A stretch of 64,000 nucleotides of DNA from Macrostomum lignano. Its lineage: Eukaryota. Position 1 is the first letter of the stretch; each line of letters begins with the position of its first letter. Under the pieces are notes generated by a model. The model did not search any database, was not told the DNA's origin, and saw only the letters and a list, made by a program, of their open reading frames with translations. Below, piece by piece: positions 7,087 through 62,072 of this stretch. The stretch spans positions 62,001 through 126,000 of the forward strand of contig NIVC01000632.1 in NCBI GenBank assembly GCA_002269645.1. Reading direction: 5' to 3'. A program made the translations under genes and the position numbers.

Positions 7087-7148
7087 CTAACCCTAACCCT
7101 AGCCTAACCCTAACCCTAACCCTAACCCTAACCCTAACCTAACCCTAA
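7087..7148. repeat. Interstitial (CCCTAA)n telomere-like tract, copy 2
   Basis: Same position inside unit 2. Confidence 0.9.
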
Positions 7149-29474: not shown

Positions 29475-29548
<74 letters not shown>

Positions 29549-29575
29549 GAGACAGACACAGACAGACAGACAGAC

Positions 29576-29618
<43 letters not shown>

Positions 29619-29623
29619 GAGAC

Positions 29624-29670
<47 letters not shown>

Positions 29671-29701
29671 GAGACAGAGAGACAGACACAGACAGACAGA
29701 C

Positions 29702-29744
<43 letters not shown>

Positions 29745-31009: not shown

Positions 31010-31060
<51 letters not shown>

Positions 31061-37000: not shown

Positions 37001-38529
37001 GCCAGGCACGCCTCCGACATCTTGCGCCGGCACTCTGCCTCTGCTTTGCCGCTCATCTTCCTGGCCGCCGCTGATGTTGTCGACCCCGCCGAGGCCGCCG
37101 CTACTGCTGCCGCGGCCACCGACCCGGCTGAGGCTGAGGCCGCCGCCGCGGCCGCCGAAGACGCCGCGCTGTGGAAGGAGGCCTGGACAGACTGCGCCGG
37201 CTCGGCCACCGCTCTGGCCGACTGCGTGTCCGAGGCGCTGACCCTGTTCGGACAGGCCATTCGCTCTGCCTACTGGCCGCTCAGAGCTCAGGGCGCGGCC
37301 GCCGTCAAGCAGCTGGCCGCTCAGCTGGACCTGGGCGTCGAGCGGACCGCCTGGCTGCTCAACGACCTGCTCATCCCTGCTATGCAGTCCAAGCACCAGC
37401 AGGCCCAGGTCAGGCGGGTCATGTGCGAGGCCGCCGCCACCCTGTGCGTCCGCTGTCCCCAGCTGGCCGAGGCGCCCCGGGCCGCCACTCTGAAGCTGCT
37501 GGTGGCCGCTGCCGAGTCTCAGTCGGCCTGTCTGGCGCCGGCTGCCCAAGTGGTCCGGCTGTGCGGCACCCCTGTGCTGGACCGGCTGTGGGAACAGGTG
37601 GGTCATCATTTCATGCGTGTGTGAGCTTTGGAATTGGCTTTTCTCTGCGCTGAGGATTTGAGTCCCTGTGAACTGGGGATTTGAGTCCCTGTGAACTGGG
37701 GATTTGAGTCCCTAGTGAACTGGAGATTTGAGTCCCCTGTGAACTGGGGATTTGAGTCCCTAGTGAACTGGGGATTTGAGTCCCCTGTGAACTGGGGATT
37801 TGAGTCCCTGTGAACTGGGGATTTGCGTCCCTAGTGAACTGGGGACTTGCGCAATACTTAATTTACCATTACCTGACTGAATTAGGCGTTCTATTCTCAA
37901 TATCAATTCTCAATTCCCAGGTGAAGGCCAACCTGCCCGGCTCCCTGCCCGCTCTCGGCCAGCTTTGGGTGGCCGACCCGGACCAGCAGAACCGCTACCT
38001 GGCCCAGGTGTGCGAGCAGCTAGTTGCGCACGATAAGGACCTGCACGGCTGTCTGCGCACCTGCCGGGAGCTGGTAGAGCGGGACTGCGCCCTGGCCAGT
38101 GGCGGCTCCCCGCCGGAGCCTCTGCTTGCCTGCGCGCAACACCTGCTGACCGCCGTGCGGCACCGCCGGACTCACTTCTACCAGGACGCGCTGCACCTCA
38201 TCACCTGCCTGGTCACCTGTATGAGCCCGTCGGGGGCCAGCAAGCTCAGCGCCGAGTTCCAGGACATGTGCACCGCGCTCATCGACCTGGCCCAGCAGCA
38301 GGCCTCGCCGTCTCTGCAGTCGCACTTCGATCCTCTGCTGCAGGATGGAGGCGTAGCCGCAGCTGCCGCCGCCGCCGCTGCCGCAGCCGCCGCAGCCGCT
38401 GCAGCATCGACAGCAACAAAAACGGCGGGCGCAGAAGGCGAAGGCGAGGGCGAATTCTCCGGCGAGGCGTCGCCAACCGTCAGGCCGCCGTCGCCAATGC
38501 CGGAGGATGAGGCTTCGTCGACTCAATGA
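26677..38529 (+). CDS. ECM29: Proteasome adaptor and scaffold protein ECM29 (HEAT-repeat), complete 11-exon model of about 1813 aa
   Basis: Exons 26677-26835, 27766-28001, 28079-28219, 28715-29399, 29940-30280, 31434-31889, 32961-33511, 34364-34746, 35176-36123, 36665-37597 and 37921-38529. All are GT-AG with consistent phases, totalling 5442 nt. Recognisable ECM29 motifs: [78 protein letters not shown]. Confidence 0.93.
26960..27660. repeat. 25-bp minisatellite (GGATCGGGGGTAGCAGTGGCCTGAA)n, ECM29 intron 1
   Basis: Period 25 (27001 and 27026); about 28 copies. Confidence 0.95.
28278..28670. repeat. (CAGA)n plus derived 26-bp repeat (AGACAGACACTAAGACAGGCAGGTCC)n, ECM29 intron 3
   Basis: Pure CAGA at 28278-28344, then period about 26. 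Confidence 0.93.
29476..29866. repeat. (CAGA)n microsatellite, ECM29 intron 4
   Basis: Direct observation; source of the QTDR / CLSV ORFs. Confidence 0.97.
30330..30930 (-). mobile_element. Penelope-like element relic in ECM29 intron 5
   Basis: The minus frame reads [37 protein letters not shown], resembling the PLE RT-to-GIY-YIG linker (P.V..YHP...P..A.RR..NL..LL). A hammerhead motif lies downstream on the same strand. Confidence 0.6.
30341..30382 (-). ncRNA. Minimal type I hammerhead ribozyme motif
   Basis: Minus strand: UGGC CUGACGA A GAGC-CCAGAG-GCUC GAAA CCGGU A GCCG. Core boxes, stem II, palindromic stem III, GUA cleavage triplet and a GGC/GCC stem I are all present. Confidence 0.7.
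30996..31059. repeat. (GA)n microsatellite
   Basis: Direct observation. Confidence 0.95.
31919..32860. repeat. 34-bp near-perfect minisatellite (GAGGAAGGGTAGCGGCTCCCACTGAAGCATCCCT)n, ECM29 intron 6
   Basis: Period 34 (31921 and 31955); about 27 copies. Confidence 0.97.
33618..34325. repeat. Two related 30-bp minisatellites, ECM29 intron 7
   Basis: (ATTGTAGGACCCTGTGAGATCGATCAAACT)n grades into (GCCCATCTTAGGACCCTGTGGGATGCAGAG)n; both share TAGGACCCTGTG.GAT. Confidence 0.93.
34812..35083 (+). mobile_element. tRNA-derived SINE, family A
   Basis: A box (TAGCGGTTAG) and B box (GGTTCGATTC), followed by CCTTGAGCAAGACACTTAAC..CAGTTCACCCAGCTGTAAAATGG. A second copy is at 57916-58191. Confidence 0.8.
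36152..36636. repeat. 22-24-bp minisatellite (TCTGAGTGAGCACTCCCCTAGCTA)n, ECM29 intron 9
   Basis: Direct observation. Confidence 0.93.
37655..37845. repeat. About 23-24-bp minisatellite (GGGGATTTGAGTCCC(T)AGTGAACT)n, ECM29 intron 10
   Basis: About 8 copies. Confidence 0.92.
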
Positions 38530-39030
38530 TTCTCTATCTGTATCTGTGCAAACTGATGCTTCATCTGTTTATCCCGAATAGCCGGCTTGACCGCGCCGCT
38601 CCGAGTTAGCGATTTGGATTTATTTTATGCCGACTTGAACTGTTCTTGTTGTCTCAATTAGTGCGGTCCAAGAGTTGCTCTCTGTTCGCAGTGCTGCTTG
38701 TTTGGTTAGCAGAGCCTTACTACTGTGAATCATCCGCAACCAAGCGATATGCTTGTTTTTGCTTTTCTATGGCGCTAAATTCTTAAGAAATTAATAAATA
38801 ATAAATCAACCCAGCCAATGCAGGCTTTGTCGAACTGATTGTTGAATTTTTGTTGGCAATGAAGGCTTGCTGAAAAATGAGACAGGTCTGCTTGTTTATT
38901 AGTTAGCTTTTTATTAATTAATGTGTGCCACGGTCTGAGCACTGGCGCTGTCGTGATACAGATCAACTCAGTCTGCATTGCCCGATCGCAAATCTTTCCA
39001 ACAGAACGAGCTGCCGGTTGTCGAGATGTC

Positions 39031-40079: not shown

Positions 40080-40490
40080 CCAGCACCGACACCCGGCCAC
40101 CCGCTTCAGCCCGTTGCGTCACTGCAAGACCACATCCGCTGCATTCATTTGAGGCTGTCGCAGCAGGGTCTGTTTTCTTCCGTCAATTGTTTATCAGATC
40201 ACCAAACGTCAAGACGTCTCGCTAACTAGACTCGCAGTTGAAGTCCTGTCTCTGCGAGGCGGGCATCAGTACTCGGAGCACAGCCTGTCTCTGCGAGGCG
40301 GGCATCAGTACTCGGAGCACAGCCTGTCTCTGCGAGGCGGGCATCAGTACTCGGAGCACAGCCTGTCTCTGCGAGGCGGGCATCAGTACTCGGAGCACAG
40401 CCTGTCTCTGCGAGGCGGGCATCAGTACTCGGAGCACAGCCTGTCTCTGCGAGGCGGGCATCAGTACTCGGAGCACAGCCTGTCTCTGGC
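40080..40490 (+). mobile_element. Tyrosine-recombinase (DIRS/Ngaro/Crypton-like) relic ending in a 39-bp minisatellite
   Basis: ARPHPLHSFEAVAAGSVFFRQL..LKSCLCEAGIS matches the relic at 52830-53120. The repeat unit (40238-40487, period 39) contains TAC TCG GAG CAC AGC CTG, i.e. YSEHSL. Confidence 0.7.
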
Positions 40491-42080: not shown

Positions 42081-45000
42081 ATGGAGAAATCGGGCTTGGA
42101 GAAATCTTCCCAGTCCAGCGACGGAGTCCGCAGCTCCTTGACGCAGTTCTGCAACTACACCACCGCCCACGGACTGGGCAGATTTGGGGCCCAGGCCAGC
42201 ACCTTCGGCAAAACCCTGTGGCTCTGCTTCCTGCTGGGCACCTACGGCGGGTTCACCTACCACATATACACTCTGGGCCTACATTTCGCCAGCGTGCCGC
42301 TCTCCACCAGCCTATCCACCTCGCTGCCGTTCGAGTTTCCCGACGTGTACATCTGCCCAACAGACACCGTGACCATGAGCCGGCTGGCCTCACCAATTGA
42401 CACCAACGAAATATTAAGAAACAGTCTTTGCAGCAGCGAGTGCGTTCTGAGAAAATTACTGTTCGAGATCAATTCTAAAGTCAGCTACAGTGCTAGCACA
42501 GAGGCTCTGCTCAATACTGTCATCTCTGCAGAGGAGGCCGTCCTGAACGAGCTGCAATATGGCAATACAAGTGAGAAAATTCTATTGAAGTTTGAATTGA
42601 ATGAAGATCAACTGGACTAAGCTGCATTTATGTTTTCTTAGACACATTTTCCCTGTCTAAGCTCGTAATTTCAAGGAGGTAAACCTCAATAAGAGCGCGT
42701 TGGAAGGTCATCTAAACTTAGAATTTCTCGTGCCAGTATTGGTCGTCAACTGAAGGGTATGTTTGGTGTGACGAGTGCCTGACGGGCTTGTAGTAATAAA
42801 ACAAAACTATAGTCTAAAAGGTCGAGAAACTGATCCAATTATCCAAAGAATCAATTTTACTTTCCATCCTAGCAATCAATCATTTGAGTGGCAGTGTATC
42901 CTACTTTGTAGAAGGATCACAAATTCACAAAGGAATCAATGTTGTTATTCCATTCACATGTCGAGAGCAGAAAGGCAGTCAAGACTCTTGAACAAAAATG
43001 TGAGCTAGTGAATCAACCTAACATCCAGAACCAGAGCAGAAAATGATTTCAGTTGATACTCATAAACTCCATGATTGGGCCGGTCGCTTTAAACAGTGCA
43101 GGCAGGTCACAATCATTGCATCGAAAGGAATGCCGGGTTAATTAAGCAACACAATGGACTTACAAGCAAAGCTCCGAACTAGACATGACATGCCAGCCAG
43201 TTTGATTCCAGTTGGTTTTGTTCCGCTTTACTTTAGACTGCATTCCGGTGCTTAATTTGACATCCCATTTAGGGAGAGCATAAAATAAGTCTATTTTACC
43301 ATAAAAGCTCATAAGATAGTTTCAACAAACCAAATTTTCGACCCTATGCCTGTTTCTGTTTTGATTCTCAAAACTCGCCATAAAAATATTCTCGCGCCGA
43401 CACGCCTCTCTCCAGCTTCTAGCGACACCTGTCGTGTCACAGCGGCTGGCGAAGAATACACAGGCAGCCTCTCCGTGGTCCCCGTCTACGAAAGTCTCTT
43501 TGTAGAATTCAGGAATGTCGCCCTCACGACTGCGCCAGCCAAACCCCATGTGACACTCACCAGCTGCATCGGCTGGAACGAGGCCGCTAGGGAGCTGCAA
43601 GCTGCGGGCCTGGACCAGCTGGCTGGCAGAGTTTTCAGTGCAGGCTTCGCTGACACCGACCGCAGCTGCAGGCAGCCTCCCAATCTGCCGTTGACGGCTC
43701 TAAAGCAAAATTTTACCTGTGAGTTGTTTGGTCACAGTATGGCTATTCAAGCTTTCAGCTTTGTCATGACACCACAGTCGTAAAAATGGCAGATCCGGTA
43801 TCGGAGTTCGTCGGTTGCATTGGACTGAGGGCCTGGCAGGAGAATGAAACTTGCATTGAGACCAAGTTCAATGTCATGACGGTGACCATGTGCCGGCAGT
43901 GCTGCTACAACAAGCAGTTTCCTTACGCCGGGGTGCATCGGTTCGCTTGCTATTGCTCCGATCGAATAGTTTCTGACCGGAAAGATTACCTCGATACCAA
44001 CGCGGACAATTCTTGCACTGAAAAGTGTCCGGGACATCTCAACCAAATCTGTGGCGGAGGCGATGGAAGCGAAGCCTACTTGTCTGTGTACAGAGTCATT
44101 GCTCTTGGTAAGCCATGAATAGTACCGAGGATAAGTGGAGAATTCCTCAGCTTGACGTTCACTCTTTTTTCACTCAGGCAGCGTTCCGGGTTTCGTACTG
44201 CCGTTCAGGCCCAACCTGGCAGGCCTGAGCAATGGGCCGTACTGCTTTTTTAGGGACTCCAGAAACAGTCTGTCTGCGTCCTACTGCAACATACCCTACT
44301 GCCGTGAGGACACGAGTGCATTCAAATATTGTGTACTCTAAACAGAGCAGTCCCTCAAAATCCAATAAAACAATTTTGGGCTTCAGAAATTTCGCATAAC
44401 AACGACTGTCTGCGGACAAATGATGCTTCTCAAGCAGACGACCTTCAAATGGCGAGGTACTCCGGCTTCGTGAACTTTACGGAAAGCGGCGAAGGCTGCA
44501 TGGACTGGCGCAGCTTCAGGGTGCTTGTGCTTTCCGGGAATTTGAACTACACCTGGGACATCAGCTACTCTGCGAATAGAGTAGGTAAGAAACTCACCTG
44601 ACAGTAGACGAGTTTTTTAACATTCAATTTCAAATTCCATTGAATTCATTTTTATGCCCTCCGCTTCGAGTTTAGCTCGAGTGGTGAGTCTGGACGTAGA
44701 GACGCCAGACTACCAAATGAGAGACTGCAGCCCGCTGCCCTATAACCACTGCCGAGCCGTTCGCCTGGTCGCTGACTTGATTGTCTACGAGTTTGAGTCG
44801 GGGGTGTACTCTTACATGTGAGTCGGGAGTGTACTCTTACATGCGAGTCGGGAGTGTACTCTTACATGTGAGTCGGGGAGTGTACTCTTACATGCGAGTC
44901 GGGAGTGTACTCTTACATGTGAGTCGGGGAGTGTACTCTTACATGTGAGTCGGGGGTGTACTCTTACATGCGAGTCGGGAATGTACTCTTACATGTGATT

Positions 45001-48000
45001 TCAAAGTCTTCCAAACTATGGTACAGTCCACAGACTATATTAAAAAAGACAGCAAATCTCAGGACCCTGTCCAGACAAGTTTTGGGTCAAACAACAATGT
45101 AGAAAATGGTTGCAGCTTCAGCCAAACTCATTTCGATCGATGGGTGATAGTTGAAAGTTGAAAGGTGAAAGTTGATTTTTTTATTCGGCGTATTCATGTC
45201 TATACAAATTCTATAGCCCAGGCTCGATTTCAAATTTCACATTTATCTGGGACTTAACTGAAATCTTAGCTCGGGTCTGCTCCTGCAATTGACGCCCTTG
45301 AGGGCCGACCCCCAAAGCACAGTGAAGTGTACATGCCTAACGATAAATAAAGTCTGGGCCACTGTACACTCCTGTGTGAGTGTGTGCCTGTGCGTATGAC
45401 TGCGTACGTATCCACACGCTTGTGTGCCTGCTCAGGGGAGTCGGCGGAATGGCAGTAATCTCTTGCCGGTTGTGTGACAATGTCGCCTAAAGTGTGTTAT
45501 GGTGCACAAAGCCCCCTGCCTCTAATAAAAACTTAGAGAATGGTTGTTGGACTTGACTCAGGCGCAGGTGGCTGCGGGCATCTGGATGCAGCGGGGAGGC
45601 GTCGACGCCCATTACGCTAACCCCTGGGGACCACGGGCAGCTCGTGCTGCGGTGTCGCGCAGGGAGATCCGGAGGTGCCGGTGACAGCAGCGTGGTCCCC
45701 CTTCGGAGAGTCCAGGAGGGGGTGGTCGCTCGCATGATAGCCCTTAGGTAGCGGACGAGCTGGCAGAGATTCTCGGGCCTGAAAATTTCCAAGGGTACGA
45801 GTTTGGGCCGAAGTAGGTGAGCCTGTCCTGAGTAAAGAACGGGCATTCACAGATGAAGTGCTCCGCATTCTCAACACCGGGGAGGCAGGATCACGGCTGG
45901 CTTTGTGCAACCACGGCTTTGCTAACACCCACACAGAATCGAACCGGCCTAACGAGGGAGTCGATCCCCACCGTGCATCTGTTAAATATCGTTAAGCAGA
46001 AGTTGTATTTTTTCATTTCAGCCGCAAGATCCACGAGTTCTCCAGCGCTGCTTGCGCCTATGCAAAGTCTGGCGAGGCCCGCATCGGACACTGCAGCATT
46101 CCGCTCTGCTGTAAGCCAGGAGGGTTGCTGCAAGGCCAGTCAGCAGCTGCCATTGCTTTTTTAGCGGGACAGAGCGTAAACCCCGGGATCTTATAAAAGA
46201 CAAGCTGTTGAAACCCTCGGGTATTTTACCCGCTTGAATTTCAATCCCCGGAACTATTTCTAAAGTATTTCTACTATTTCTAATGTGTTGTGAGCCCCGT
46301 CCTCCGGAGCAACGCCTACAGCTTTAACCTGTCGGGAAGCTGCGACCCCCAGGTCCCCAGTCAGAGCTCCCGTCCCGCGCCCTAGGGAGAAGCAGAAAAA
46401 GGACAGTAAATCGCGAACACGAACTTACACACCGTAGCCGATGCAGTTCGCCGTGCACTTTTTATGGTAGATCGACGAGTCGTTTTAGTCAATAGCCAAC
46501 GGAGGCGGACCAACGCGCGCAAGGGAGGAGTCTGCCCTCCAGACAGCGACTATATATTTTTCATTGGTCCTACGCGTACATGAATATACCTTAAGAACAA
46601 ATGTACGGTACAGCAGGGGAGGTGGGGCGGGGTGGCGTGATCGGCGTACGCATTGATTATTGATTGGAGGGGTGGGGCAGACTGGAGGGTTGGGGCGGGG
46701 CAGGAGGGCGAGAAAGGGCACGATTGCACAACAAATGTTTTGTTTTTCTTTGTACCTTAAATCTGAAGCCATGCTACGACAAAAACTTGTGAATACGAGT
46801 AGTTAGAACAAGGACTACTACGAACACTTAGTGTCTAGTAGTCGTTAAGTTAGGATAGAGGTAAAAAAGCTTAGAGTAAATTCGTGATAAATTGAATGTT
46901 GCGTTTTATGCGTTGACACTGCGTTGAGCCGAAGAGCGTGGCTTAAGTTGCATTTATATTTTGTTTAGAACGATATAAGTCGAGGCAAGCCTTAATAGAG
47001 TCAGTCGGTAGCTGCTTGTGACACAGACAAATAAATTAAACGCTGGGGCAACGACTGAAAATAAAAGTACATTGGATTCGGATCGGTGTACAACATTATA
47101 ATTTGGGGCTTTTGAAACGATCTCTCATCTCTCCTCTCTAATCTCTCCACTCTCTTCTCGTTTCTCTCTCCCATATTCTCTCTCCCCTCTCTCTCTCGTC
47201 TCATCTCTTCTCCTCTCCTCTCTTGTCTCCCATTTCTGCTCTCTATCGTCTCGTAGCTAAAAATGCGCTTTTAGCAGTTTCTTGCACTTTTAGGCAGGAA
47301 GACTTCGATTTAGGAAATTCTAAGGTAGCCTAAGACATTCTCCGTAGTGAGTTTAGGTTGGGCTCAGATAGCTTTCAGACTTAATGTTCCATTAAAAACT
47401 ATTTATGCAGACAATGTTCTCGGCTGTCAGTATTCTGTTGTAATGAGCCGAGTTGGAGCCGAGCTGCTACTCAGCAGGTTCGGCAGCAACCTGGGCATCG
47501 GACTCAGCGGTTGCCGCCTCGGTCGTCGCCGCTGCCGCATGGAAAACTTCACAACACTGCATCATCCGAATCTGGGCGTCTGCCATCGGTTCAATCAGGG
47601 CGGAGCCAGGTTAATTAACTCAGAATCTTCTAATGTCGACGACACAGAACTCGTGATTAACTACTTCACGGATGCGACGGACAGTCGCGGCCGCCAGTTC
47701 GCTGGCACGAAACTCCTGACTAACGCGCTTTCGCATTGGGCACTGGAAGCTGACGAGAAAGTAGCAATGAAGGTCAGTAAAATTCAAAAAAACTTTTAAA
47801 CACATTTATCTTCGATATAACCCAGGATGTAGTCGGGTTATTTTTATCAAGGACTACTCAAAATGAACAAATTGCGGGTCATTTTAATTTTCTTTTACTT
47901 CTTTGTTGACCCGTTGGGACAAGTGAGCTGAGATGAAAGCAATAATAGAAAGACTTCTGCTGCATGCAAGAAACCTGACGTTATTAAGCTCAACCCCCAG

Positions 48001-50601
48001 TAAAATCCAGTCAATAGCACAACTATTTCTATCTCTACAGGTGATTATAGTGCCACCGGGGCAATATCCCAGGCCTCAAGACACAGTCACCGTGGGTCCT
48101 GGCCAGCACATGAGGCTCATGATCCGATACGATCGAACCGTTCGATACTCGAAGCTGACCGATAAAGAATGCGCTGCCTCGGCCCAGCCTGTGGAATACG
48201 TTCTGCCGAATTGGAAGTCCTCGCTTCGGCTGTTTGATAAGAATAGAAGGTGAGCTGCGGTGCCCATTGCTCTCAGTCATCTTTTTTTATTAGAGGCAAG
48301 GGGGTTGTGTGCACCCTGGCGCACTTTAAGCGACATAGGCACACAACCGGCGAGAGGCATTACTGCCCATTCCGCCGACTCCCCTGAGCAGGCATACAAG
48401 CGCGCGGATACGTACGCACAGGCACACACTCACACAGGAGTGTACAGCGGCCCTAACTTTATATTATCGTTAGGCATGTACACTTCACTGCGCCTTGGGG
48501 GGTTGGCTCTCAAGGCCGTTAATTGCACGAGCAGAGCCAAGCCGAGATTCCAATTCAGCCCCAAATTAATGTGACTGCACTTGGAATCGAGCCAGGGTCG
48601 CTGCACACCAGAGCAGCTGCGCTACCGCTGGGCTACGGCCCCCTGCTCTCAGTCATCAAGTTCAGGCCACAGATAGTGCACATACCTGACGATTAGAGAG
48701 TCAGGGCGGGTGTACACCCTATGCGTACAGTATTGGCGAATGGCAGAATCGCCTCCCCGCTGGCCGTACAATTCGTCGATAGAGTTGTGCCACGTCGGGG
48801 CTTGCAGCCCTCCTGCCAATATCTATTTTTCAACTACTTACAAAGGATTACTCCAGAAATCCTACAAAATGAATTACAGAGAGAATGTGAACTATACAGC
48901 ATTTCAATCAGCCTCCGATTGGATGGAGAGGACGGATCTGCTTCGTGAAATGCTCGAAGGACAAACCAACGGAAGGTGCGTCTTTGAAAATTAGACTTCT
49001 AAAATATTAGAGCTTTCACTTAGCTACTGAAATACTCGCGGGCGTACCCTATAGCTGTAAAGAAACTCTAAAAAACAAATTTGCATATTAATTAAGCTAC
49101 TTTTGCTAGCTAAAATCAAACGGTTGTCAACAAAAATCGATCGAGAGATTTGTTAAGCATCGCAAATTTAGGTCGATCTTGGGTCAAAAGTAAAGAATTT
49201 TCGCTGCTTGCTAGTCCTATATACTAGTCCCATACGAATCTATGTGATCGTTTTTAGAAAAATTTATAACCAAAAATGTCCTGTAATTTTTCATTACTGA
49301 GCAAATCTTCAACCCGTTTCAGATCGGCAATCAGCCCGACCATGCGATTCGCAGCCAGCACTGTGGACGACTGCATAGACGAGTTCGTTGCGCGCCGATT
49401 CCTTGAGAACTGCAGCTGCCTCCCGCTGTTCCTGCCTGTCCGAGTGGGCGCGTTCCCGCCCGAGGTCAAGCAGTGCTTCAATGTGACCTCGCTAGAGGGC
49501 ATTGGCTCAGTGGAGCAGTGCTACCAGAGCCAGATTGAACAGCTGGCCTCACTGCAGAAAAGCGCTCGCCAAGCCTGCGTCCCCCTGTGCGAAACTCGCA
49601 GCTACTCTGTGAAGCTGGCCAGCTATCGGTGGCCAGAGATATCCACGCTGAATGCTCACGATTTCTTCCAGAGCCACCTCTTCGATTGGAATTATCCGAA
49701 CAACTTTCTCGGCTCCGAGGGAATTTCAACTCTATTTGGACTAAACTATTTCTCCAGACTGGTGAGCCAGATGGACACCTCTGTAGACGGCAGTATTAAC
49801 AAGGCAACGGCCGTCAAGGAGCTCACAGAAAATCTCAGTCTGATTGAAAAGAACTTTGTCAGAGTTACTGTGCAGGCTTCGAGTCTGTACGGTCAGGAGA
49901 TCAAGGAGGAGCCTTCGTACACAAGCAAGAACCTATTGGCTGATTTAGGCGGTAAGTCAGAAGAGTTGCACCAAGCCACCTGGTATAGATTTAGTTTGGG
50001 AAATGTATGGGCAAATAGAGATCAAGTGACTCAGCTCCTTACAATGGATGAGTCTACGACAATTGACTGCAGCGAGTTGACTGCTGACCCAATTCTAACC
50101 CTAGACCTGACCTAAATCGTGGGTAGTCAAATGTCATCGGCAGTCAAATTGATAGAAGTCAAATTGTGTCAGTCAGTCACGGTATCCCAAAATATTCATG
50201 TCTCAATAACTAGACCGGCTGTTTTGGCTCAGTTGTTTACGCTTTAGACTCCCATGCCAATGTCTGGTACACGAAAATTTCGATTCACGTAAGGACGACC
50301 CCAGGGCGCAGTGTGCACGTGTCTGTAGCCGAGGTCATCTGTGCTTGGTTAAAAATTTTACGCTGTGACTTGCTCTGATGCAAGGGCTGGGGAAAAATTG
50401 ACATCATCTGTTCCCCATCCACCAGGTGCTCTCGGTCTGTGGTCGGGGGTGTCGGTCCTGACGGCATGCGAGCTGATAGAGCTGTTGGTGTACCTGGCCA
50501 TCGCTCTGCAGCAGAAGCTCGGTCACACCCAAGTGTCAGAGAACGGCGCACCCCGGCAGAGTGAGCACGAGAACCCAGTCTCGATTTCCGATTGTGTTTA
50601 A
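42081..50601 (+). CDS. DEG/ENaC (ASC family) sodium channel with kringle-WSC-kringle ectodomain insert, paralog A, about 1025 aa
   Basis: Exons 42081-42570, 43416-43718, 43793-44107, 44178-44303, 44387-44584, 44676-44817, 47379 (or 47411)-47772, 48041-48249, 48880-48975, 49323-49951 and 50426-50601. Hallmarks: FCNYTTAHG, TM1, FPDVYIC, GVCHRFN, the Cys-rich thumb, and LLADLGGALGLWSGVSVLTACELIE. The 44817-47379 junction is uncertain. Confidence 0.88.
43420..44303 (+). other. Kringle-like domain 1 interrupted by a WSC domain (paralog A)
   Basis: Kringle N-half C-RVTAAGEEYTG..C-IGW..RSC-RQP (exon 2); WSC domain FVGC..MTVTMCRQCC..YAGV..CYC..C..KCPG..ICGG..LSVY (exon 3); kringle C-half GPYC-FF..SYC-NIPYC (exon 4). 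Confidence 0.8.
44795..45000. repeat. 25-26-bp minisatellite copying the exon/intron junction (GAGTCGGGAGTGTACTCTTACATGT)n
   Basis: About 8 copies beginning inside exon 44676-44817. Confidence 0.92.
45215..45480 (+). mobile_element. tRNA-derived SINE family B, 5'-truncated
   Basis: Body matches the reverse complement of 48282-48643. Confidence 0.8.
45740..45900 (-). mobile_element. Non-LTR retrotransposon ORF2 C-terminal zinc-knuckle relic
   Basis: Minus strand CLPGVENAEHFICECPFFTQDRLTYFG resembles the C..C...E..EH....C..F...R motif. Confidence 0.5.
48282..48643 (-). mobile_element. Full-length tRNA-derived SINE family B with A-tail and 14-bp TSD
   Basis: Minus-strand head GGGGCCGTAGCCCAGCGG (A box) and GGCTCGATTCC (B box). 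A T7 tract lies at 48282-48288. TSD TGCTCTCAGTCATC at 48268-48281 and 48644-48657. Confidence 0.9.
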
Positions 50602-51240: not shown

Positions 51241-51377
51241 TCGAAGTATACCATATAGAGGAGGCTCAGAAGCTACTGGTGATGGATATTCAGGCAACTA
51301 CTGCAGGCTGTGTCGCAGTGAGACAGTATCAAGCTCCGGCTGCATCTTTAACAGATCATCGATTCGTACGCAGTCAT

Positions 51378-51602
51378 AAGCACAGGCACACCCTCACACA
51401 GGAGTGTACAGCGGCCCTAACTTTACTAATCGTTAGGCATGTACACTTCACTGTGCCTTGGGGGTTGGGCCTCAGTTGGCGTTAATTGCACGAGTTATCC
51501 CAAGCCAAGATTCCAATTTAGCACCAAATTAATGTGACTGCACTTGGAATCGAGCCTGAGCCGCTGGCACATCAGAGCTCCGCGCTAGACCACTGGGCTC
51601 CC
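51378..51602 (-). mobile_element. SINE family B copy, 3'-truncated
   Basis: Matches about 48420-48640. Confidence 0.82.
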
Positions 51603-54114: not shown

Positions 54115-57100
54115 TCAATGAACCGAGATGGAGACCTCAGGTGCTGCAATGTCTGTCATTTTGTCTGTCATTTCAACCTCAGTGGCTGAGTCGTCAGCTT
54201 TCATCTCGCCGCTGTCTTGCTGCTCAGCGTTGCCAGTCGCAGGCCCTGACGGCTGGGCGGGCTGCTCTGTACGTCGAGTCGCTGCCACCAGGTAGACCAG
54301 CAGCTCAATCAGCTCACACGCGGTAAGAACTGAGATGCCGGACCAGAGACCGAGAGCGCCTAAAAAATGCTTACATATTAGCCATTGTTCGGAACTGCAA
54401 ATGACAGCATAACACGGTAGCTTTGAAATGCTCACCGCCAAGGTCGGCCAGCAGATTCTTGATGGTGTAAGAAGGCTCTTCCGTCATCTCCTGTCCGAAG
54501 TCGCTGACCGGCTTGATTGACACCTTGACCAGGCTCTCCTGCAAAACTTCCAGCTTGTTTCTAAAATCGAGCAGCTCAGAGGCCGAGAGCATCGTTGAGC
54601 GGTTGTACATTTCGCTACTCCGGATGTCCAGGTAGAACAGATTCGCGATGCCTTTGGAGAACAGGAAGTTGTAGGGGTAGGACCAGTCCCCTTGGCTGTT
54701 CTGCATGAAGTCCACCGCTGTCTCGATGGTCAGGCCGGGCCACGGGTAGGTGATGGGTCGGAAAGTGTAGAAGCGAGTGTTGCACATCGTTAGGCAGACC
54801 TGGCGGGCTTCCATTTCGTAACGCGATATTGAGCTCATTCGCTCTGTGTAACACTTCTCCATCCTCTTGATGCTCTCCATGTCTGTCTGGTTGAAGCAGT
54901 AGGTGTAGTTCTGGAAGAGCTGCACCGAAACAGGAAGAAACGAGGGCAGACAGCCGCAGTGTTCGATGAACTTCTTCACCGCGTACAGGTTGACGCAGTC
55001 GCGCTGATCTTGCATCTCGAATGTCAAGTTTTCGCTCATCGGACTGCTGCAAGTCGCAATGGAATAATTTTAAGCAGAAAAGGGCAAAGCGAAAGCTGAG
55101 AGCAGCAATGCCCTGCAAGAGAGGAACTTACATGCTGCTATTTACAGTCCTCAGCCGGCCTCGTAAAGTCTGGAGCTTTGCTGACCAGTTCAGTGAGGAA
55201 ATTGTAGTCGTCATATTGAATGAATCTCTGGAGATTTTAATTCAAGACGTTTTTGCTCTGCTTGTCAGTTCAAAGGCTATGCAATGCTAAACAGAAAATT
55301 CAAGCTCACAACTCAGGACTTGAGTAGTTCCAGCTGGTGCGCCACGAGGGAATCCGGTAGACTGTGGGCCCCGCGGGCGGACGGCACTCCTGCGTTGGAG
55401 GCTTCGAATACCTGTTCAGCTTGTCGAAGCGAATGTTCAGCTGCAGGTGCTGGCCCGGGCTGGCGGTGATGGCGTTTTCTCGCCAGGGAAACTGGCCCTT
55501 AGGAACCAGAATCACCTGGAGGGTTTCGGGCTGCCAATATTCATTTCAATTAGAAGTAACTGGTCTGGAACAAACCATAAGCCCCTGTTGTAGTTACTTG
55601 CTATTGCGGAAACGTTTTTCTCGCTCTATACTCCATTTTCTGAGTCATGAGCGCCCTGCCCACCATTTCTAGTCTAGTTCGTTAATATTGTGAGGTTGCG
55701 TTTGATTTGTGGAGTTGGGGTGGGGGCTGCTCTGTCAGTTGGCAGGGCGCGTTGCACTGTGGGTCTGGTTGGGGGGGGGGGGTTGGCGGGCGTGGCAGGG
55801 TCTGGCCGCCGGCCGGGCTTTGCGCGTGCCCCTCCCCAGCCGTGCCCCTGCCCCGTGCTCAGGGCTGGTTGGCTGCGGCCGGGCCAGCTTTGGCGCGGGT
55901 GCGGCCCCTCCCCCCTAGGCGGGGTTTTGATTGGCTGGCCGGCGCGGTCAGTCTCTATTTTGTTGGGGTAGCTTGTTTGGTTGGGCTTAGCCGGTGGGGC
56001 CATCTGCCCCAGGGTTTGATTATTATTTAATGCGGCTCTGGGCCTTGCTCACGCCCTTCGCTCGGTTTGCTCTGTTTGCTCTGTTTGTTCTGTTTGTTCT
56101 GTTCGTGCTGTTTTGTGTTTTGAATTGGTGTGCTCGGAGAGTACAAGTGCGAGACTAGACCGTTAAACAGCAATTCTAGCTATTGAATACGAGAAAAGAA
56201 ACAGAAGAGCCTTGAGAAGAATCTTGGAAGTTAGAACCTGCACGAGCGAATCAATAAACGTAACGGCGATTTGGCCACTGGTAAGCCGCCTGCTGCTTGA
56301 GTTCGTTCTTTTCTGGGAGCTTGTTAGGCCGAGTTCTTGCCAGAGCGTCATAACGCCGGGAGATCATATAGCTTTTTGTAGTATTGTACCGTCTACTCTA
56401 TATAGTGTGTACAACCTACAGTATTTAGACTAGAAGCACTCGAGAGTGTCACCACACCCCGAGCCGCAGCGTGAACTCTGAGTGTCACAACACCAGAGGG
56501 ATCGAACAATTATCGCAGAGCGTCGTCACGCCTGCTCGTATCCATAAAAGTACAGACAGAGCGTCACTACGCCTGTATCTTACGTATAATATATATTGTA
56601 CTCGGGACTGGGCACCCAAACCGACCCGGGTTACAACACTTGCATCTCGCTTTACTCTGTGCATGCCACCACCCCAGTTGGGTGAGTCCTTTTATAACCT
56701 TTCTATCGCGGACTATTATAATCGCTCCCCAGTTATCGTGCATGCCAAATATACTTCGTGAGTTGACTCTAAATTCTCGGCTCTTACAATATTTTTATAT
56801 CTCTATTCAGGCAGTACTATTTAAGCGGCTTACGCAAGTTTGCCGAAAGTTTTGGGACAAAGTTCTTGCCTTCATGGCGCTCAGCGTGTCGTCATTCGCG
56901 TCGACCAGTCCGGGAAAAATCACTTTGGCCATCCGGCTCAGACCGGGCAGCCGCCGGCCCTTGGAGTCTGTAGAGTCGGTGAAGTAATTAAAAGACAGCA
57001 ACGATTCCGTGGCCTTGAGATCTTTGGTGAGCCCGACGAACTTTTCCTGGTTGAACCGGTGGCACAGTCCGAGCTCCGGGTGCAGCAGGGTGGTGAAGTC

Positions 57101-60100
57101 CTCCATTGTGCAGGCCTGGTTGCCGAAAGAGCAGCCGGTGAAGCCGATGCCGATGCTGCTGCCGAACCGGCTGGCCAGCAGGGCGTTGCCCACCTGGTCC
57201 CGCACCAGGCCGGGGATGCTCTGCGTCACTCGGGCTGGCGTAAGAGATTTTGGTTGCGGCAGCGTCTCAGGATCAGTTCGAATCAATCACGAAATTGAAT
57301 AAGGCTTTGAACCTAGCCATGAGCTTTGGGGCTCAGTAGTTCGGCGGCTACCGTGTCTGACTCTCGCGCCAGAGTACCCAGATTTGATTCCGTGTGCCAA
57401 CCCCAGGGCACAGAATGTTCTACCGCCTGACGATTAGACAAGCAGGGCTGCTGTGCACCCTGTGTGAGCGTGTGCATGCTCAGGGGTCAGCGGTATGGAC
57501 ATGACTGCTTGCGTTCACTCTGGCTGTCTCCTTGATTAGCGGCAGTGCCCAGCGCCTTACTGAATACTCACTAAATCCATGAAGATTTAAAGGCTTGTAA
57601 CGACCTTGACTTGGCTTGAAAAGACTTGTATCGATCAACCTTGAATGGAATCCCGCCTTTCTAGCAAATTAAATCAATAAAACCACTCACAGCAGGCGTC
57701 CACTCTGCAGGCGCCCAGGATCGCACTTCTCTGGTTGATCATGACGAAGCAGACAGGAGTATCGGATTTGACAATCTGGTGACGGCTGGGTGTGTGGGGA
57801 ACTTGTGACTTTCGCAATTTTTTAAATAATGAAATGTCGTGCATCCAATGAAAGAAAAAAGACATGTAAAGCTATTAAATATTGGTATAACATTAAGAAA
57901 TGTATTGAATGTAATAGGGGCGTCCTAGCCTAGTGGTTAAAGCGTCGGTTTCACGACTGAACGGTCGGGAGATCGATTCTCTACAGATTCGAAATAATTG
58001 GTGTCATTGAGCAGGAAATTTAACTTTGTATTGCTTCAGTTCACCCAGCTGTAAAATGGTAGCCAACAGCTGGGGTAACTAAGGGTGTGTGTGGCGACCC
58101 TCAAGTCTTTGGACTCAACAGCCGCATGCAGCCTTCAGATTCGCCGGCAATAGCTGCGGCTGAGCTATTGGTTGCACATCTGCCCATTAACGCGGATTCA
58201 ATTTATTATTATTATTGGTATGGAGTGTGGAAAATTCAACTAATCTAAGCTAGCAGATTCGCAATTTTGTCTCTTTAGACTTACTCGGGCAAGGTCTTAC
58301 TTAAGGAACATTTAATGGCCTTAAATGTTGTAAAGAAAATTGCTGGTGACAGAGCTCTGCTTCCTGTTCGAATTTCTAGTTCTAGACCTTCATATCTGGA
58401 TTCTGTGTGCTCAAAACGACAGTTGAGTCTGGACTGGGAACCTCTACTGACAATCGCGATACTCCAAGAACGCCCGTCAATACTTACATAAAGTAGTACC
58501 CATCAGATCTGCCGGTCTTATAGACGAAGGCATCAATAACCACCCTGGCAGCCCGGCAGAAGTTTCCCGTGTTGTTCGTGTACAAGCTGTAGTCCGGAGT
58601 CTCAACGTACATTTTTTTTATTTCAACTGCGAAAGTTGTAAAATTTTTGTGGCTTTGCTGTATAATAAAATTTCTGTCCATTGAGTTTAGTTGAGTTGGA
58701 GAGTAACTGAAATAGATTGAAATACTCCTGACCCGCTGGGTGCATAACGGTGTACCGCTTGTAAAGTGTTATATCTCATCTTTGAAACGCTAAAAAGTTG
58801 ACGATTGAGTCAGCAACGCCGCACTCAACCGTCACGCCGACCTGACCCAAGTGACCTGCTTCGGCGGCGCCCAGCACTGATTGTGGTGGTTGTTGGTTTT
58901 TGTGTTTTTGTAGATGAGGCTGTTTTTTCCGGTGGTTTCTTGCAGAAAACCTCCAGTGGTGCAGAGTTTTTCTAAAGTCACTTATACATTTCTAGTGCGC
59001 ACTGTCAGTAGCACTCTAATTATTTTTTCTGAACACGTCTTGCAATAAAAACTTACTCATTCTCACATCGTAGGAAAGCAATCTGAAACTTAATTTGAAA
59101 GAATTCCACTGGCCTAAAAATGTGGTTTCTAAATCAGACCAGTTGAGGCAGTTGTCGCGAGTCTTGGTCTTGGATCTGTGGCCGGTGTAGCGTAGGTACT
59201 GCGAATCACTGATGGAGCCATCGTTGCTGCTGGATAGACAGTCGAAGGATGAGGAAATGGCTGTGGGAATGCGGAAAACAAGTCATGAAGTTAAAACAAT
59301 GCCGTCTTGCTGCAATTGTTGAATTAGTTTTAATTTTTGACCTTTTGTAGCTAGCTGTCGGATTGCAACAAAGGACTTAAGTAGCTCAGAGTAGTCGCTC
59401 CTTCAACGCTAAGAAATATCTGCTTGATATGACCAAAACTATTGGCGCTCAACAGGTAAACTAGAAAAAGTAGCTTTTGGTCACTTGTAGTTTCTTGTAT
59501 AAGGCCAGAGTATCAAAGCTTTGAGGCCTGGCAAGTATTTGGTCAAGGGCTAAAGGTCGAATCGATCATCAATATGGGTGGGGGCACAGCCTAGTGGTCT
59601 AGTGGGGCGCTCTGATGTATCAGTGGCTCGGTATCGATTCCAGGTACAGTCACACTACGACGTCTACGACTACGACGAGGCTAAATTGAATTCTCGGCTT
59701 AGCTCTGCTCGTGCAATTAACGCCCTTAATGAACAACCCCCAAGGCTCAGGGAAGTTTACGTGCCTAACGATAAATAAAGTTAGGGCCCATTTACACTCC
59801 TGTGTGAGTGTGTGCCTGCGTACGTAGCCACGCGCTTGTTTGCCTGCTCAGTGGAGTCGGCGGAATGGGCAGTAATGCCTCTCGCCGGTTGTGTGCCTAT
59901 GCTATTAATATAAGGACTGTTGAGTCGATTACAAAAATTGTTGAAAATTTTTGTAATTACAAAGTTTAATTAATTAGCAGTTTTACAAAAACTGCTGAAA
60001 ACTTATTGCTCGTAATTGTATTGCTAATTTTATATACTGAGAAGTTGTAACTGTAATGACTGAAAAATTAACAAATTCCCAGGTAAAAACAGCGGTGCTC

Positions 60101-62072
60101 ACGGCAGTAAGGCACATTGCAGTAGGTGGCACCCAGGCGGCCCCCAGCGGCTCTGTAGAAGCAGTAGGGCCCGACTCTGAGGCTGTCTAATGCGGGGCTG
60201 AACGGGATGAACAGAGGCTTGGGGTCTGCAGGTGAGAAATCGAAATAGTAAAGTTAATCAATGCCTGCGCATGCCAGAGCATCGAATGCATTAAAAAACA
60301 ACGCTCGTATTGTAATTAACTATTACATGTGCATTGGGTGCATTGCGCAAGTGTCTTCTGTAGGACTAGATACGCCGTTGTAAGGTGCTAAGGTGTGACA
60401 GCTAACATCACAGACGGCAGGGCAAACTGCAGCTCAGCCTTAGCAAATGAGCCATAATGCCACGCACATACAGAATATGAAATGATTCAGGAAAGCTTAG
60501 CAGGACTGCTTTATCTCCAACTTAAAATGTCTTGAAAAGAGTGACACAATTTTAATCGATGGAAGGTCGTGTTCATTTTGCGCACTGACAACTGGATTGC
60601 ACAAACGCACTCGTGACGCTCACCCAGACTCCGCACCAGATAGACGCTGAGCGCTCTCTCGCCTCCGCAGATCTCCTTAGCATCTCCTGGGCAGCGAACT
60701 CCGCACGCAGAGTTCTTATGCTTGAGGCTATCGTTGCCAGGCAGCTCGTTGCCGCAGTAGCAGGTGTCGCCAGCCAGCAGGCTCATGTAGCTGTAGGCAG
60801 CGTTGTAGCAGCACTCTGCGCACAGGCCGAGCCGGAGCTGGTCAAACATGAAGCCGCTCAGGCACTTGTGCTGCCGCAGCCCTGTGCCTTCTGCGTCGCT
60901 TGCGGGCAAGCAACCGACGTAAGTTTGCAGCGGACCTGCATTTGAACACCCGGTTGCAGAAATCCGCTTTCAGTTCAGTAGCAAGGAATAATGCGTGAGC
61001 TATTGTTGACGAGACGTACCGGTAAATATCTTAGCGAGACTAAAATATATTAGTGAAGCTGTACGTAATTTATGAGTACGTCAGACAGCACAACTAAAAA
61101 TATGCAAAGAGGCTTGAGGCTGGAACACCAAAGCAGACAATGGAGATTGGGCGGTGAGGCTGGGATTGGAGGGGTTAAGCTGGGAGGTAGGAATGTGAGT
61201 TTTCATTCAAAGAAGGAATTGCCCTTTTTATTGCTGCGCCGCACGGAACTAAGACGCACGAAATTCGAGGACACGTCAAATTTTTGCTGCGCACCTTCCT
61301 AAGCAAGAATCAAGTCGCCAGCCCTTCGGACCGTCGAGATATTCAACGAGTTAGCCTAATACTCGGATACTCGAACTTTGTCACCTGGTGTCATCTGCTG
61401 AAACGCCGACAGCTTTGGGGGATGACTGAAGTTCTTGTGAACTTTGTTGAGGATACCCAGCAGTGAGATACGCACTGGCACTTATGGAAAAATCCAAGTG
61501 TCTGGGTGAATCGTTGAATATCTCGACGTTCCGAAGGGCTGGCGTCTTGATTCTTCTTTGAGAAGGTGCGCAGGAAAACGTTGGCCTGCATTTTGTGAGC
61601 CTGAGTTGCTCTATGTCTGTTCAGGAGCACCGTCGTGTCCAAAAGAACATTAAAATGCTTCAAATGAACAACGCACCAATCTATTTATTAGCATATCCGT
61701 GATACAAGTAGAACTTTTAAAATGCCATCTCTTGCCACTCACGCGTCGCATTGTCGTGGAAGGCGGTGAGCGGCAGGCCGGTTGGCTGCCTACAGCTGCG
61801 GTGGCTGTCGGCGAAGCCAGCGGCGAGGATTCTTCCAGCCAGCTGGCGCAGTCCGGCCGCCTGCAGCTCCCTGGCGGCCTCATTCCAGCCGATGCAGTCG
61901 CTGTAGCTCACATGGGGCGGCTGGTCTTTCCACTGGAAACGTGTATAATAAAAAAACAGAAAGTACATTTTTATTTTTGCAACAATGATGGAAGCATTAA
62001 ACACGGGCACCCGGGACAGGTTGCCGCGGTACTCTTCTCCATCCGGAGTTATTCGGCACACGTTCAAAGGCA
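54115..62072 (-). CDS. DEG/ENaC channel with kringle-WSC-kringle insert, paralog B (5'-partial; TM1 exon not found in the window)
   Basis: Exons 62072-61743, 60935-60624, 60225-60103, 59260-59057, 58626-58488, 57785-57691, 57234-56870 (GC donor), 55515-55310, 55227-55132, 55046-54436 and 54359-54115. Phases are consistent and intron positions match paralog A. TM2 reads LLADLGGALGLWSGISVLTACELIE. Confidence 0.88.
57916..58191 (+). mobile_element. tRNA-derived SINE family A, copy 2
   Basis: Matches 34812-35083. Confidence 0.8.
59577..59905 (+). mobile_element. SINE family B copy
   Basis: tRNA-like head (TAGTGGTCTAG, TCGATTCC); body matches 48282-48643. Confidence 0.82.

What the first reader, a model, noticed from the sequence alone, without database searches (positions are those of the whole stretch)
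43420..44303. WSC domain nested inside a kringle rather than next to it
Seen in both paralogs: kringle Cys1-3 (C..G..Y.G..C.GW..CRQP) are on one exon and Cys4-6 (GPYCF..YCN(I/V)PYC) on another. A complete WSC domain sits between them on its own phase 1-1 exon (43793-44107; 60935-60624 in paralog B). All six kringle cysteines are kept. Established: symmetric phase-1 exons are the classic exon-shuffling units for extracellular modules, and Kremen has the two domains in tandem, not nested. Inference: a WSC exon was shuffled into a kringle intron so that the kringle presents it on a loop, and the WSC exon could be skipped in frame.
Basis: partly seen in the sequence, partly recalled or inferred. 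Interest (0 to 1): 0.8.

Follow-up and report, generated by a model that had tools for sequence, protein, structure and literature searches.

The report
WSC-split kringle in flatworm ENaC channel
In two neighbouring sodium-channel genes of the flatworm Macrostomum lignano, a WSC module on its own exon interrupts a very divergent kringle module; this is a clean natural case of one protein module shuffled into another, but it is not yet shown that the split kringle still folds as one unit.

Summary
Exons 43416-43718, 43793-44107 and 44178-44303 all have AG/GT sites and phase-1 borders. They encode three cysteines, then a Pfam-significant WSC domain, then three cysteines. Paralog B has the same layout on the minus strand.

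Both genes are DEG/ENaC (amiloride-sensitive) channels of Macrostomum lignano. The unit sits in the variable extracellular region after TM1 and is followed by a second, uninterrupted kringle-like module (K2). At least seven paralog lineages keep the same order. In all five with genomic sequence, the WSC exon is phase 1-1.

Kringle ancestry rests on sequence profiles only:
- K2 hits PDB kringles at E 4.5e-6 and matches reference kringles in hhalign at 95%.
- K1 without the WSC exon scores 75% (E 2.4e-5), about 9 SD above cysteine-fixed shuffles, with C2-C6 in register and the gap exactly in the C3-C4 loop.
- No natural sequence passes Pfam's kringle threshold.

AlphaFold models were shallow (pLDDT about 70). 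They did not reproduce a kringle fold, so assembly of the two halves is untested. Exon skipping is also untested.

Verdict: a real, previously unannotated architecture and a new variant of known exon-shuffling mosaics, so far seen in one species.

The parts
42081..42570 (+). Gene A exon 1: start codon, HG motif (TTAHGLGRF), TM1, FPDVYICP, first helices of the ectodomain; ends in phase 1
   Evidence: Pfam ASC PF00858 E 3.6e-13, profile 1-87. Gene model assembled.
43416..43718 (+). K1N exon: N-half of kringle-like module K1 (Cys1-3; C..GEEY.G, C.GW, CRQP), phase 1-1
   Evidence: hhalign; trimmed Pfam Kringle E 1.2e-5.
43793..44107 (+). WSC exon (315 nt, phase 1-1, 10 cysteines), nested in the C3-C4 loop of K1
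   Evidence: Pfam WSC 37.5 bits, above the 27.8 cut-off. The paralog model matches yeast Wsc1 7pz2 at E 3.5e-4 and Kremen1 at E 0.01 in Foldseek.
44178..44303 (+). K1C exon: C-half of K1 (Cys4-6; GPYCF...YCNIPYC), phase 1-1; Cys6 is the last full codon
   Evidence: Pfam Kringle profile 59-79. Junctions confirmed by P0001.
44387..44584 (+). K2N exon: Cys1-2 of the second kringle-like module (RYSG..T.SG..C.DW), phase 1-1
   Evidence: Pfam Kringle profile 8-28. Family profile against PDB kringles E 4.5e-6.
44676..44817 (+). K2mid exon: VETPDY...NHCRAVR (Cys3), phase 1 in and phase 2 out; its 3' end starts a 25-nt tandem repeat
46022..46110 (+). K2C exon: Cys4-6 of K2 (AACAY...HCSIPLC), phase 2 in and phase 1 out
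   Evidence: The homologous junctions appear in P0004.
47411..50601 (+). Gene A exons 8-11 (47411-47772, 48041-48249, 49323-49951, 50426-50601): rest of the DEG/ENaC ectodomain, TM2 (GLWSGVSVLT) and stop codon
   Evidence: Pfam ASC E 5.8e-43 on the assembled 1012-aa protein; the profile resumes at position 155. Best solved relative is FaNaC 7yvb, E 6.9e-19.
61743..62072 (-). Paralog B K1N exon (possible 72-nt internal intron at 62004-61933)
60624..60935 (-). Paralog B WSC exon (312 nt, phase 1-1)
   Evidence: Pfam WSC 49.3 bits; coordinates.
60103..60225 (-). Paralog B K1C exon (phase 1-1)
   Evidence: P0004.
57691..59260 (-). Paralog B K2 exons: K2N 59260-59057, K2mid 58626-58488, K2C 57785-57691
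   Evidence: junctions as in P0004.
54245..57234 (-). Paralog B remaining DEG/ENaC exons (approximate span). Exon 1 with TM1 lies beyond the window end.
   Evidence: tblastx of A against B.

Best explanation
What it is:
- The window holds two convergently oriented paralogous DEG/ENaC channel genes of Macrostomum lignano.
- Their extracellular region just after TM1 corresponds to the variable finger region of ASIC, ENaC and FaNaC. It carries a cassette of two highly divergent kringle-derived modules, K1 and K2.
- K1 is interrupted in its Cys3-Cys4 surface loop by a complete WSC module encoded on one exon.

Most likely origin (inferred):
- Class 1-1 exon shuffling in two steps. A kringle cassette entered a phase-1 intron of the channel gene. 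A WSC exon then entered a phase-1 intron inside K1.
- The gene then multiplied into at least seven paralog lineages that all keep the nesting.

Most likely workings (inferred):
- The three cysteines of K1N pair with the three of K1C as in a kringle (1-6, 2-4, 3-5). This closes the kringle around the base of the WSC.
- K1 and WSC then form one rigid composite binding head, comparable to the KR-WSC face that Kremen1 uses to bind Dickkopf.
- Mounted on the gating-sensitive finger, this head would let an external ligand or matrix attachment (glycan or protein) modulate or gate the channel.

Shown: exon structure and phases, WSC and ASC identity, kringle homology at profile level, family-wide conservation, and expression of the WSC-containing form in paralogs.

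Inferred: the order of the evolutionary events, the disulfide pairing, the composite fold and the function.
For: - Exons, phases and a full 1012-aa ORF with canonical splice sites.
- Pfam ASC E 5.8e-43 and WSC above its cut-off.
- With the insert removed, the protein aligns to FaNaC 7yvb. The insert falls between FaNaC residues about 160 and 207.
- K2 family profile against PDB: about 50 kringle chains, best E 4.5e-6. hhalign against reference kringles gives 95%, E 3.7e-8. Trimmed K2 of P0011 scores 36.9 bits, above the Pfam cut-off of 34.3.
- K1 without the WSC exon: hhalign 75%, E 2.4e-5, with C2-C6 in register and the gap at the WSC site. This is about 9 SD above cysteine-fixed shuffles. 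The only two PDB hits are kringles. K1 against K2 gives E 1.6e-4. Trimmed Pfam Kringle gives E 1e-5 to 2e-4 in 5 of 8 K1 sequences.
- The WSC exon is phase 1-1 in A, B, P0008, P0156 and P0011. The module ends coincide with phase-1 introns, and removing exons 2-7 keeps the frame.
- Cysteine parity of 3 | 10 | 3 means K1N and K1C cannot be self-contained.
- GenBank models of the paralogs come from an RNA-seq-guided transcriptome (PMC5730564).
- In Kremen1 the KR C3-C4 loop (residues 90-92) and the WSC both face the ligand. WSC strands beta1 and beta5 are neighbours in an antiparallel sheet, so its ends should lie close together (PMC5014086).
- Class 1-1 modules insert into pre-existing phase-1 introns (PMC3927616).
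Against: - No natural (untrimmed) sequence reaches Pfam's kringle threshold. K1 reaches only 22-26 bits even after trimming, and three paralog K1s give no hit.
- Loop lengths are far from canonical: C1-C2 is 41-45 in six lineages, and C2-C3 is 32-36.
- The AF2 model of K1 predicts two helices at pLDDT above 90 between C2 and C3, where kringles have none. Foldseek shows no significant kringle match.
- The AF2 model of K2 matches nothing in the PDB. Both models rest on 8-9 sequences and have pLDDT about 70.
- K2's intron in the same loop is phase 2, so it does not show an empty phase-1 recipient site.
- No paralog with an uninterrupted K1 was found.
- Function is pure inference.
Confidence: 0.65

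Rival explanations
1. The flanking halves are not a kringle. They are a lineage-specific cysteine-rich scaffold, partly helical, that only shares short motifs (C.W, CR.P, GP[WY]CF, C....C) with kringles. On this reading the WSC is simply one domain among linkers.
For: All natural sequences are below Pfam's threshold. AF2 predicts confident helices between C2 and C3. Foldseek finds no significant kringle match for the K1 or K2 models. PDB phmmer with the single sequence finds no kringle.
Against: Profile-level evidence points to kringle only. The scores are 9-20 SD above cysteine-fixed shuffles. All six cysteines are in register, with canonical C4-C5 and C5-C6 spacing (13 and 4) in every paralog. 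The AF2 models are shallow and of low confidence.
Confidence: 0.15
2. The order K1N-WSC-K1C did not arise by insertion. It arose from a tandem kringle-WSC-kringle ancestor that lost the C-half exon of the first kringle and the N-half exon of the second. The surviving halves then complemented each other.
For: All these exons are phase 1-1, so such deletions stay in frame. Kringle next to WSC exists elsewhere, as in Kremen (PMC5014086). K2 shows that tandem kringles exist in the same gene.
Against: This needs two independent deletions and a non-functional intermediate, against one insertion. No tandem intermediate was seen among nine family members. K1N and K1C together align to one kringle without overlap or gap other than the WSC site.
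Confidence: 0.1
3. The nesting is an annotation or assembly artefact, or the WSC exon is normally skipped, so the mature protein carries an uninterrupted kringle.
For: The K1N->WSC junction in genes A and B is inferred only. Database models for A and B are fragments. Skipping would be in frame.
Against: The same order and phases occur at five separate loci. RNA-seq-guided GenBank models of P0008, P0156, P0011 and P0157 include the WSC. The WSC keeps 10 cysteines and its Pfam signal in most paralogs. Skipping in A would create a seventh, unpaired cysteine (TGC junction codon).
Confidence: 0.05

Closest known systems
Kremen1/2 (Kringle-WSC-CUB Wnt co-receptors)
   Same: The same two module types sit side by side. 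In Kremen1 the KR and WSC pack tightly and jointly bind Dickkopf, using the KR C3-C4 loop among other parts (PMC5014086). Kremen1 is a Foldseek hit of the paralog model (E 0.01, 175 columns).
   Different: Kremen is tandem (a complete KR, then WSC, then CUB) on a single-pass receptor. Here the WSC lies inside the kringle between Cys3 and Cys4, there is no CUB, the host is an ion channel, and the kringle is far more divergent.
Gelatinases MMP-2/MMP-9: FN2 modules inserted into the catalytic domain
   Same: Class 1-1 modules placed by exon insertion into a phase-1 intron that splits a folded host domain, giving a nested architecture (PMC3927616). From memory, FN2 belongs to the kringle-like fold group.
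   Different: There the host is a large catalytic domain. Here the host is itself a small, roughly 80-residue disulfide-knotted mobile module, and the composite is in turn nested in a channel ectodomain.
DEG/ENaC channels with elaborated finger regions (FaNaC, ENaC, ASIC, C. elegans degenerins)
   Same: Same channel family (Pfam ASC; best solved relative is FaNaC 7yvb). From memory, the region after beta1 is the family's most variable part and holds ligand, protease or modulatory sites.
   Different: I know of no described member with kringle or WSC modules. A full-text search for kringle, WSC and ENaC together found none. Three other M. lignano FaNaC-like channels tested in oocytes carry other gene identifiers.
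Plasminogen / HGF (PAN-apple plus kringle arrays)
   Same: Kringles are combined with a PAN-type module. The WSC fold is PAN-like according to the Kremen1 structure (PMC5014086). Module borders are phase 1.
   Different: Those are tandem arrays with canonical kringles in secreted proteases or growth factors. They are not nested and not in a channel.
Other nested cysteine-rich modules (laminin L4 inside an LE module; integrin beta PSI/hybrid/beta-I), from memory
   Same: A whole domain is inserted between cysteines of a small disulfide-rich module, whose halves rejoin around it.
   Different: Different module families. No test was run here.

Membership tests
Kringle (PF00051) | Six cysteines in conserved order with motifs C..G..Y.G, C..W, CR.P, PWC, C....C | tested here: met
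   All six cysteines and these motifs (with GPYCF in place of PWC) are present in K1 of A, B and five other paralog lineages. C4-C5 is 13-14 and C5-C6 is 4.
Kringle (PF00051) | Score above Pfam's gathering threshold (34.3 bits) | tested here: not met
   Natural sequences score 13-18 bits. K1 with insert and loops trimmed scores 22-26 bits. Only the trimmed K2 of P0011 reaches 36.9 bits.
Kringle (PF00051) | Profile-level homology to bona fide kringles | tested here: met
   K2 profile against PDB E 4.5e-6. hhalign gives K2 95% and K1 75%, which is 20 and 9 SD above cysteine-fixed shuffles.
Kringle (PF00051) | Canonical loop lengths (about 20 / 28 / 11 / 11 / 4, from memory) | tested here: not met
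   K1 spacings are 41-45 / 32-36 / 129-153 / 13-14 / 4. K2 spacings are 28-29 / 42-53 / 30-34 / 12-26 / 4.
Kringle (PF00051) | Kringle fold with 1-6, 2-4, 3-5 disulfides | tested here: inconclusive
   The AF2 models have pLDDT about 70 from 8-9 sequences. Foldseek finds no significant kringle match. The 3 | 10 | 3 cysteine parity requires cross-links between the halves.
WSC (PF01822) | Pfam gathering threshold and WSC/PAN-like fold | tested here: met
   A scores 37.5 bits and B 49.3 bits against a cut-off of 27.8. The paralog model matches Wsc1 7pz2 at E 3.5e-4, probability 1.0.
DEG/ENaC (PF00858 ASC) | Two TM segments, HG motif, cysteine-rich ectodomain, G-x-S motif in TM2, Pfam threshold | tested here: met
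   148 bits against a cut-off of 23.6. TTAHGLGRF, FPDVYICP and GLWSGVSVLT were read in the sequence. FaNaC 7yvb matches at E 6.9e-19. Channel activity was not tested.
Kremen family | Tandem KR-WSC-CUB ectodomain on a single-pass receptor | tested here: not met
   There is no CUB hit, the WSC is nested rather than tandem, and the host is a two-TM channel.
Class 1-1 mobile module (exon shuffling) | Module encoded by an exon or exon set flanked by phase-1 introns on both sides | tested here: met
   The WSC exon, K1 (exons 2-4), K2 (exons 5-7) and the whole cassette are all 1-1 in gene A. The WSC exon is 1-1 in B, P0008, P0156 and P0011.

The most novel reading that the evidence does not exclude
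K1 and its embedded WSC fold into a Kremen-like composite binding head with permuted connectivity. Sitting on the finger of a DEG/ENaC channel, this head makes the channel directly gated or tuned by an extracellular protein or glycan ligand, or by a matrix tether. That would be a new sensory modality for this channel family, built by two rounds of exon shuffling.
Probability: 0.15. Interest if true: 0.8.

Novelty: new variant of a known kind. Interest (0 to 1): 0.55.

Why it matters
If the halves do rejoin, this would be an unusually clear natural example of three-level nesting: WSC inside a kringle inside a channel ectodomain. Every boundary is still marked by a phase-1 intron. It would show that even an 80-residue disulfide-knotted module can accept a whole domain in a surface loop.

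For ion-channel biology, it adds kringle and WSC modules to the list of things a DEG/ENaC finger can carry. It also gives a testable family of candidate ligand- or matrix-sensing channels in a transgenic-tractable flatworm.

For annotation, it shows kringles that standard Pfam scanning misses. Database records list only WSC and ASC.

Tried and rejected
- Single-sequence phmmer of the WSC-skipped K1 against PDB found no kringle.
- The word-indexed homolog search with the A/B alignment returned only P0004 and missed known relatives.
The window's own K1N-WSC-K1C therefore could not be folded, and paralog P0008 was used instead.
- Hits of the representative search that seemed to extend beyond the WSC into K1C (P0031, P0032, P0056 and others) turned out to be fungal-type multi-WSC proteins with low-complexity linkers, not kringles.
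- Folding K2 to obtain a contiguous kringle for Foldseek gave no PDB match.
- I looked for a small intron in A's long C1-C2 loop. No in-frame GT..AG option exists, and other paralogs have equally long loops, so it is coding.
- Minus-strand ORFs under the finding are incidental.
- The M. lignano channels tested by Dandamudi et al. have other gene identifiers, so I can claim no link to this family.
- A literature search found no kringle with an inserted domain and no kringle or WSC in DEG/ENaC.
Full report
**Observation**

I read the region and translated it. Three consecutive plus-strand exons have canonical AG/GT sites and phase-1 borders:
- 43416-43718 (303 nt) encodes ..DTCRVTAAGEEYTGS...SCIGWNEAA...SCRQPPNLPLTALKQNFT.
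- 43793-44107 (315 nt) encodes a complete WSC domain.
- 44178-44303 (126 nt) encodes ..GSVPGF...NGPYCFFRDSRNSLSASYCNIPYC.

Paralog B on the minus strand has the same three exons: 62072-61743, 60935-60624 and 60225-60103. Pfam calls WSC above its curated threshold in both exons, at 37.5 and 49.3 bits against 27.8. UniProt fragments that are 100% identical to the window (P0001, and the B-type P0004) confirm the WSC>K1C>next-exon junctions.

The organism is the flatworm Macrostomum lignano (source names).

The flanking exons are a DEG/ENaC channel. I assembled an 11-exon, 1012-aa ORF for gene A (42081-50601) with canonical splice sites throughout. Pfam gives ASC at E 5.8e-43, with the profile interrupted between positions 87 and 155. 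With the insert removed, the best solved relative is FaNaC 7yvb (E 6.9e-19), and the insert falls between FaNaC residues about 160 and 207. From established knowledge of ASIC, ENaC and FaNaC structures, this is the variable finger region.

Gene B is a convergent paralog, about 42% identical in the insert. Its first exon lies beyond the window.

Downstream of the split module there is a second kringle-like module, K2, on exons 44387-44584, 44676-44817 and 46022-46110. It has six cysteines and no embedded domain.

Intron phases are 1 at every module border: exon 1/K1N, K1N/WSC, WSC/K1C, K1C/K2N and K2C/channel. The WSC exon, K1, K2 and the whole cassette are therefore each symmetric 1-1 units.

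**Family**

An exhaustive search with P0004 found full-span relatives only in M. lignano: P0008, P0010, P0011, P0012/P0156, P0013/P0157, P0025 and P0051. All other hits were multi-WSC proteins.

Every complete member has the order K1N-WSC-K1C-K2 inside an ASC channel.

At the three GenBank loci that I mapped, the WSC is again a separate exon with phase-1 introns on both sides. The exon lengths are P0011 312 nt, P0008 300 nt and P0156 288 nt.

These GenBank models derive from an RNA-seq-guided transcriptome assembly (PMC5730564). The WSC-containing mRNA is therefore real for those paralogs. Database records list only WSC and ASC for them, and the kringles are unannotated.

**Is it a kringle?**

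Evidence for:
- After removing only the WSC exon, the seven-sequence K1 alignment matches a reference kringle alignment in hhalign at 75% probability, E 2.4e-5. Cys2 to Cys6 are in register, and the single long gap lies exactly between CR.P and GPYCF.
- That score (32.3) compares with 11.8 +/- 2.2, maximum 17.7, for 60 column shuffles of the kringle alignment that keep the cysteine columns fixed.
- The same K1 profile finds only two PDB sequences at E <= 10, and both are kringles.
- With insert and extra loops trimmed, Pfam Kringle matches end to end (profile 3-79) at E 1e-5 to 2e-4 in 5 of 8 K1 sequences. None of 10 cysteine-fixed shuffles hit.
- K2 is clearer. Its untrimmed family profile hits about 50 PDB kringle chains, with HGF at 4.5e-6, ROR1 at 7.8e-5 and tPA K2 at 9e-5. 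hhalign gives 95%, E 3.7e-8. One trimmed K2 passes Pfam's threshold.
- K1 aligns to K2 with the cysteines in register at E 1.6e-4.
- Cysteine counts are 3 | 10 | 3 (K1N | insert | K1C) in A, P0008, P0156 and P0011. Neither half can satisfy its own disulfides, which is what the 1-6, 2-4, 3-5 kringle pattern predicts.

Evidence against, or missing:
- No natural sequence passes Pfam's kringle threshold.
- The loops are far longer than canonical.
- The only structure predictions I could run are weak. This gave pLDDT 69.5 and pTM 0.63, with two helices at pLDDT above 90 between Cys2 and Cys3.
- Foldseek recovers yeast Wsc1 (E 3.5e-4) and Kremen1 (E 0.01), but only a 22-column, non-significant match to a kringle.
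- A model of K2 (pLDDT 70) matched nothing.

I therefore treat kringle ancestry as well supported. Retention of the fold and reassembly of the halves remain untested.

Notably, the Cys2-Cys3 core is the most conserved piece between A and B, at 84% identity against 32% for the WSC exon.

**Mechanism**

The phase pattern fits the established rule that class 1-1 modules insert into pre-existing phase-1 introns. The same symmetry would allow loss by exon skipping (PMC3927616).

The Kremen1 structure shows three relevant things (PMC5014086):
- The kringle C3-C4 loop is exposed and contributes to ligand binding.
- KR and WSC form one binding face.
- WSC strands beta1 and beta5 are neighbours in an antiparallel sheet. 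From this I infer that the WSC ends lie close together, which makes it insertable.

My best reading is a two-step exon-shuffling origin and a composite K1/WSC binding head on the channel finger. The functional part is inference.

Three caveats apply. K2's intron in the same loop is phase 2. No relative with an uninterrupted K1 was seen.

**Skipping**

Skipping the WSC exon is in frame. In A the junction codon would be TGC, adding a seventh cysteine. In B it would be CAC. No expression data were available to test skipping.

**Verdict**

This is a new variant of known kinds: exon-shuffled mosaic proteins, nested domains, and elaborated DEG/ENaC fingers. It is unannotated in databases and I found no description of it in the searchable literature.

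Noticed in passing
window 28600-38530 (+): The upstream neighbour is an ECM29 proteasome-adaptor gene (Pfam ECM29_N E 2e-30, HEAT_ECM29 E 4e-27). Its introns are packed with 24-34-nt minisatellites.
   Followed up: partly
window 3933-3995, 4683-6255, 7087-7148, 7951-17896: A 23-nt satellite (ACATGACGCTTCTATGATTTTTT) has about 440 copies over 10 kb plus a 1.6-kb block. It is bracketed by short telomere-like (CTAACC)n runs, which are interstitial telomeric repeats next to the satellite.
   Followed up: no
window 44794-44998: A 25-nt tandem repeat (8 copies) begins inside the last 24 nt of gene A's K2mid exon. It copies the exon end plus its splice donor (ACAT|GTGAGT) eight times, giving potential alternative, frame-shifting donors. 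It is absent from paralog B.
   Followed up: partly
window 48326-48600 (+), 59680-59909 (-), 51369-51467 (+), 45219-45453 and 59647-59869: A dispersed repeat is shared by introns of both channel genes and the intergenic space (tblastx). It is probably a transposable element and was not classified.
   Followed up: no
window 40245-40488: A perfect 39-nt tandem repeat (6.3 copies, 100% matches) lies about 1.6 kb upstream of gene A's start codon.
   Followed up: no
window 61933-62004 (-): Paralog B's K1N exon contains an in-frame, AT-rich 72-nt stretch. UniProt model P0003 splices it out and P0002 reads it through. This changes the C1-C2 loop from about 53 residues (read through) to about 29 (spliced out). 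The true splice form is unresolved.
   Followed up: partly
P0025 (UniProt A0A1I8HMR1, another M. lignano paralog): This model keeps the WSC but lacks the K1C exon and the first part of K1N. It is either a real exon-skipped or degenerate paralog, or a gene-prediction error.
   Followed up: no
window 43550-43680 (gene A residues 214-251); paralog B 61915-61790: The Cys2-Cys3 core of K1 (CIGWNEAARELQAAGL..LAGR..A.GFAD...SCRQP) is 84% identical between A and B, while the WSC is 32%. AF2 predicts it as a helical hairpin at pLDDT above 90. The most constrained part is the least kringle-like part.
   Followed up: partly
gene A residue about 495 (window about 44725): Gene A's K2 has a seventh cysteine (..QMRDCSPLP..) that is absent in B and the other paralogs.
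   Followed up: no
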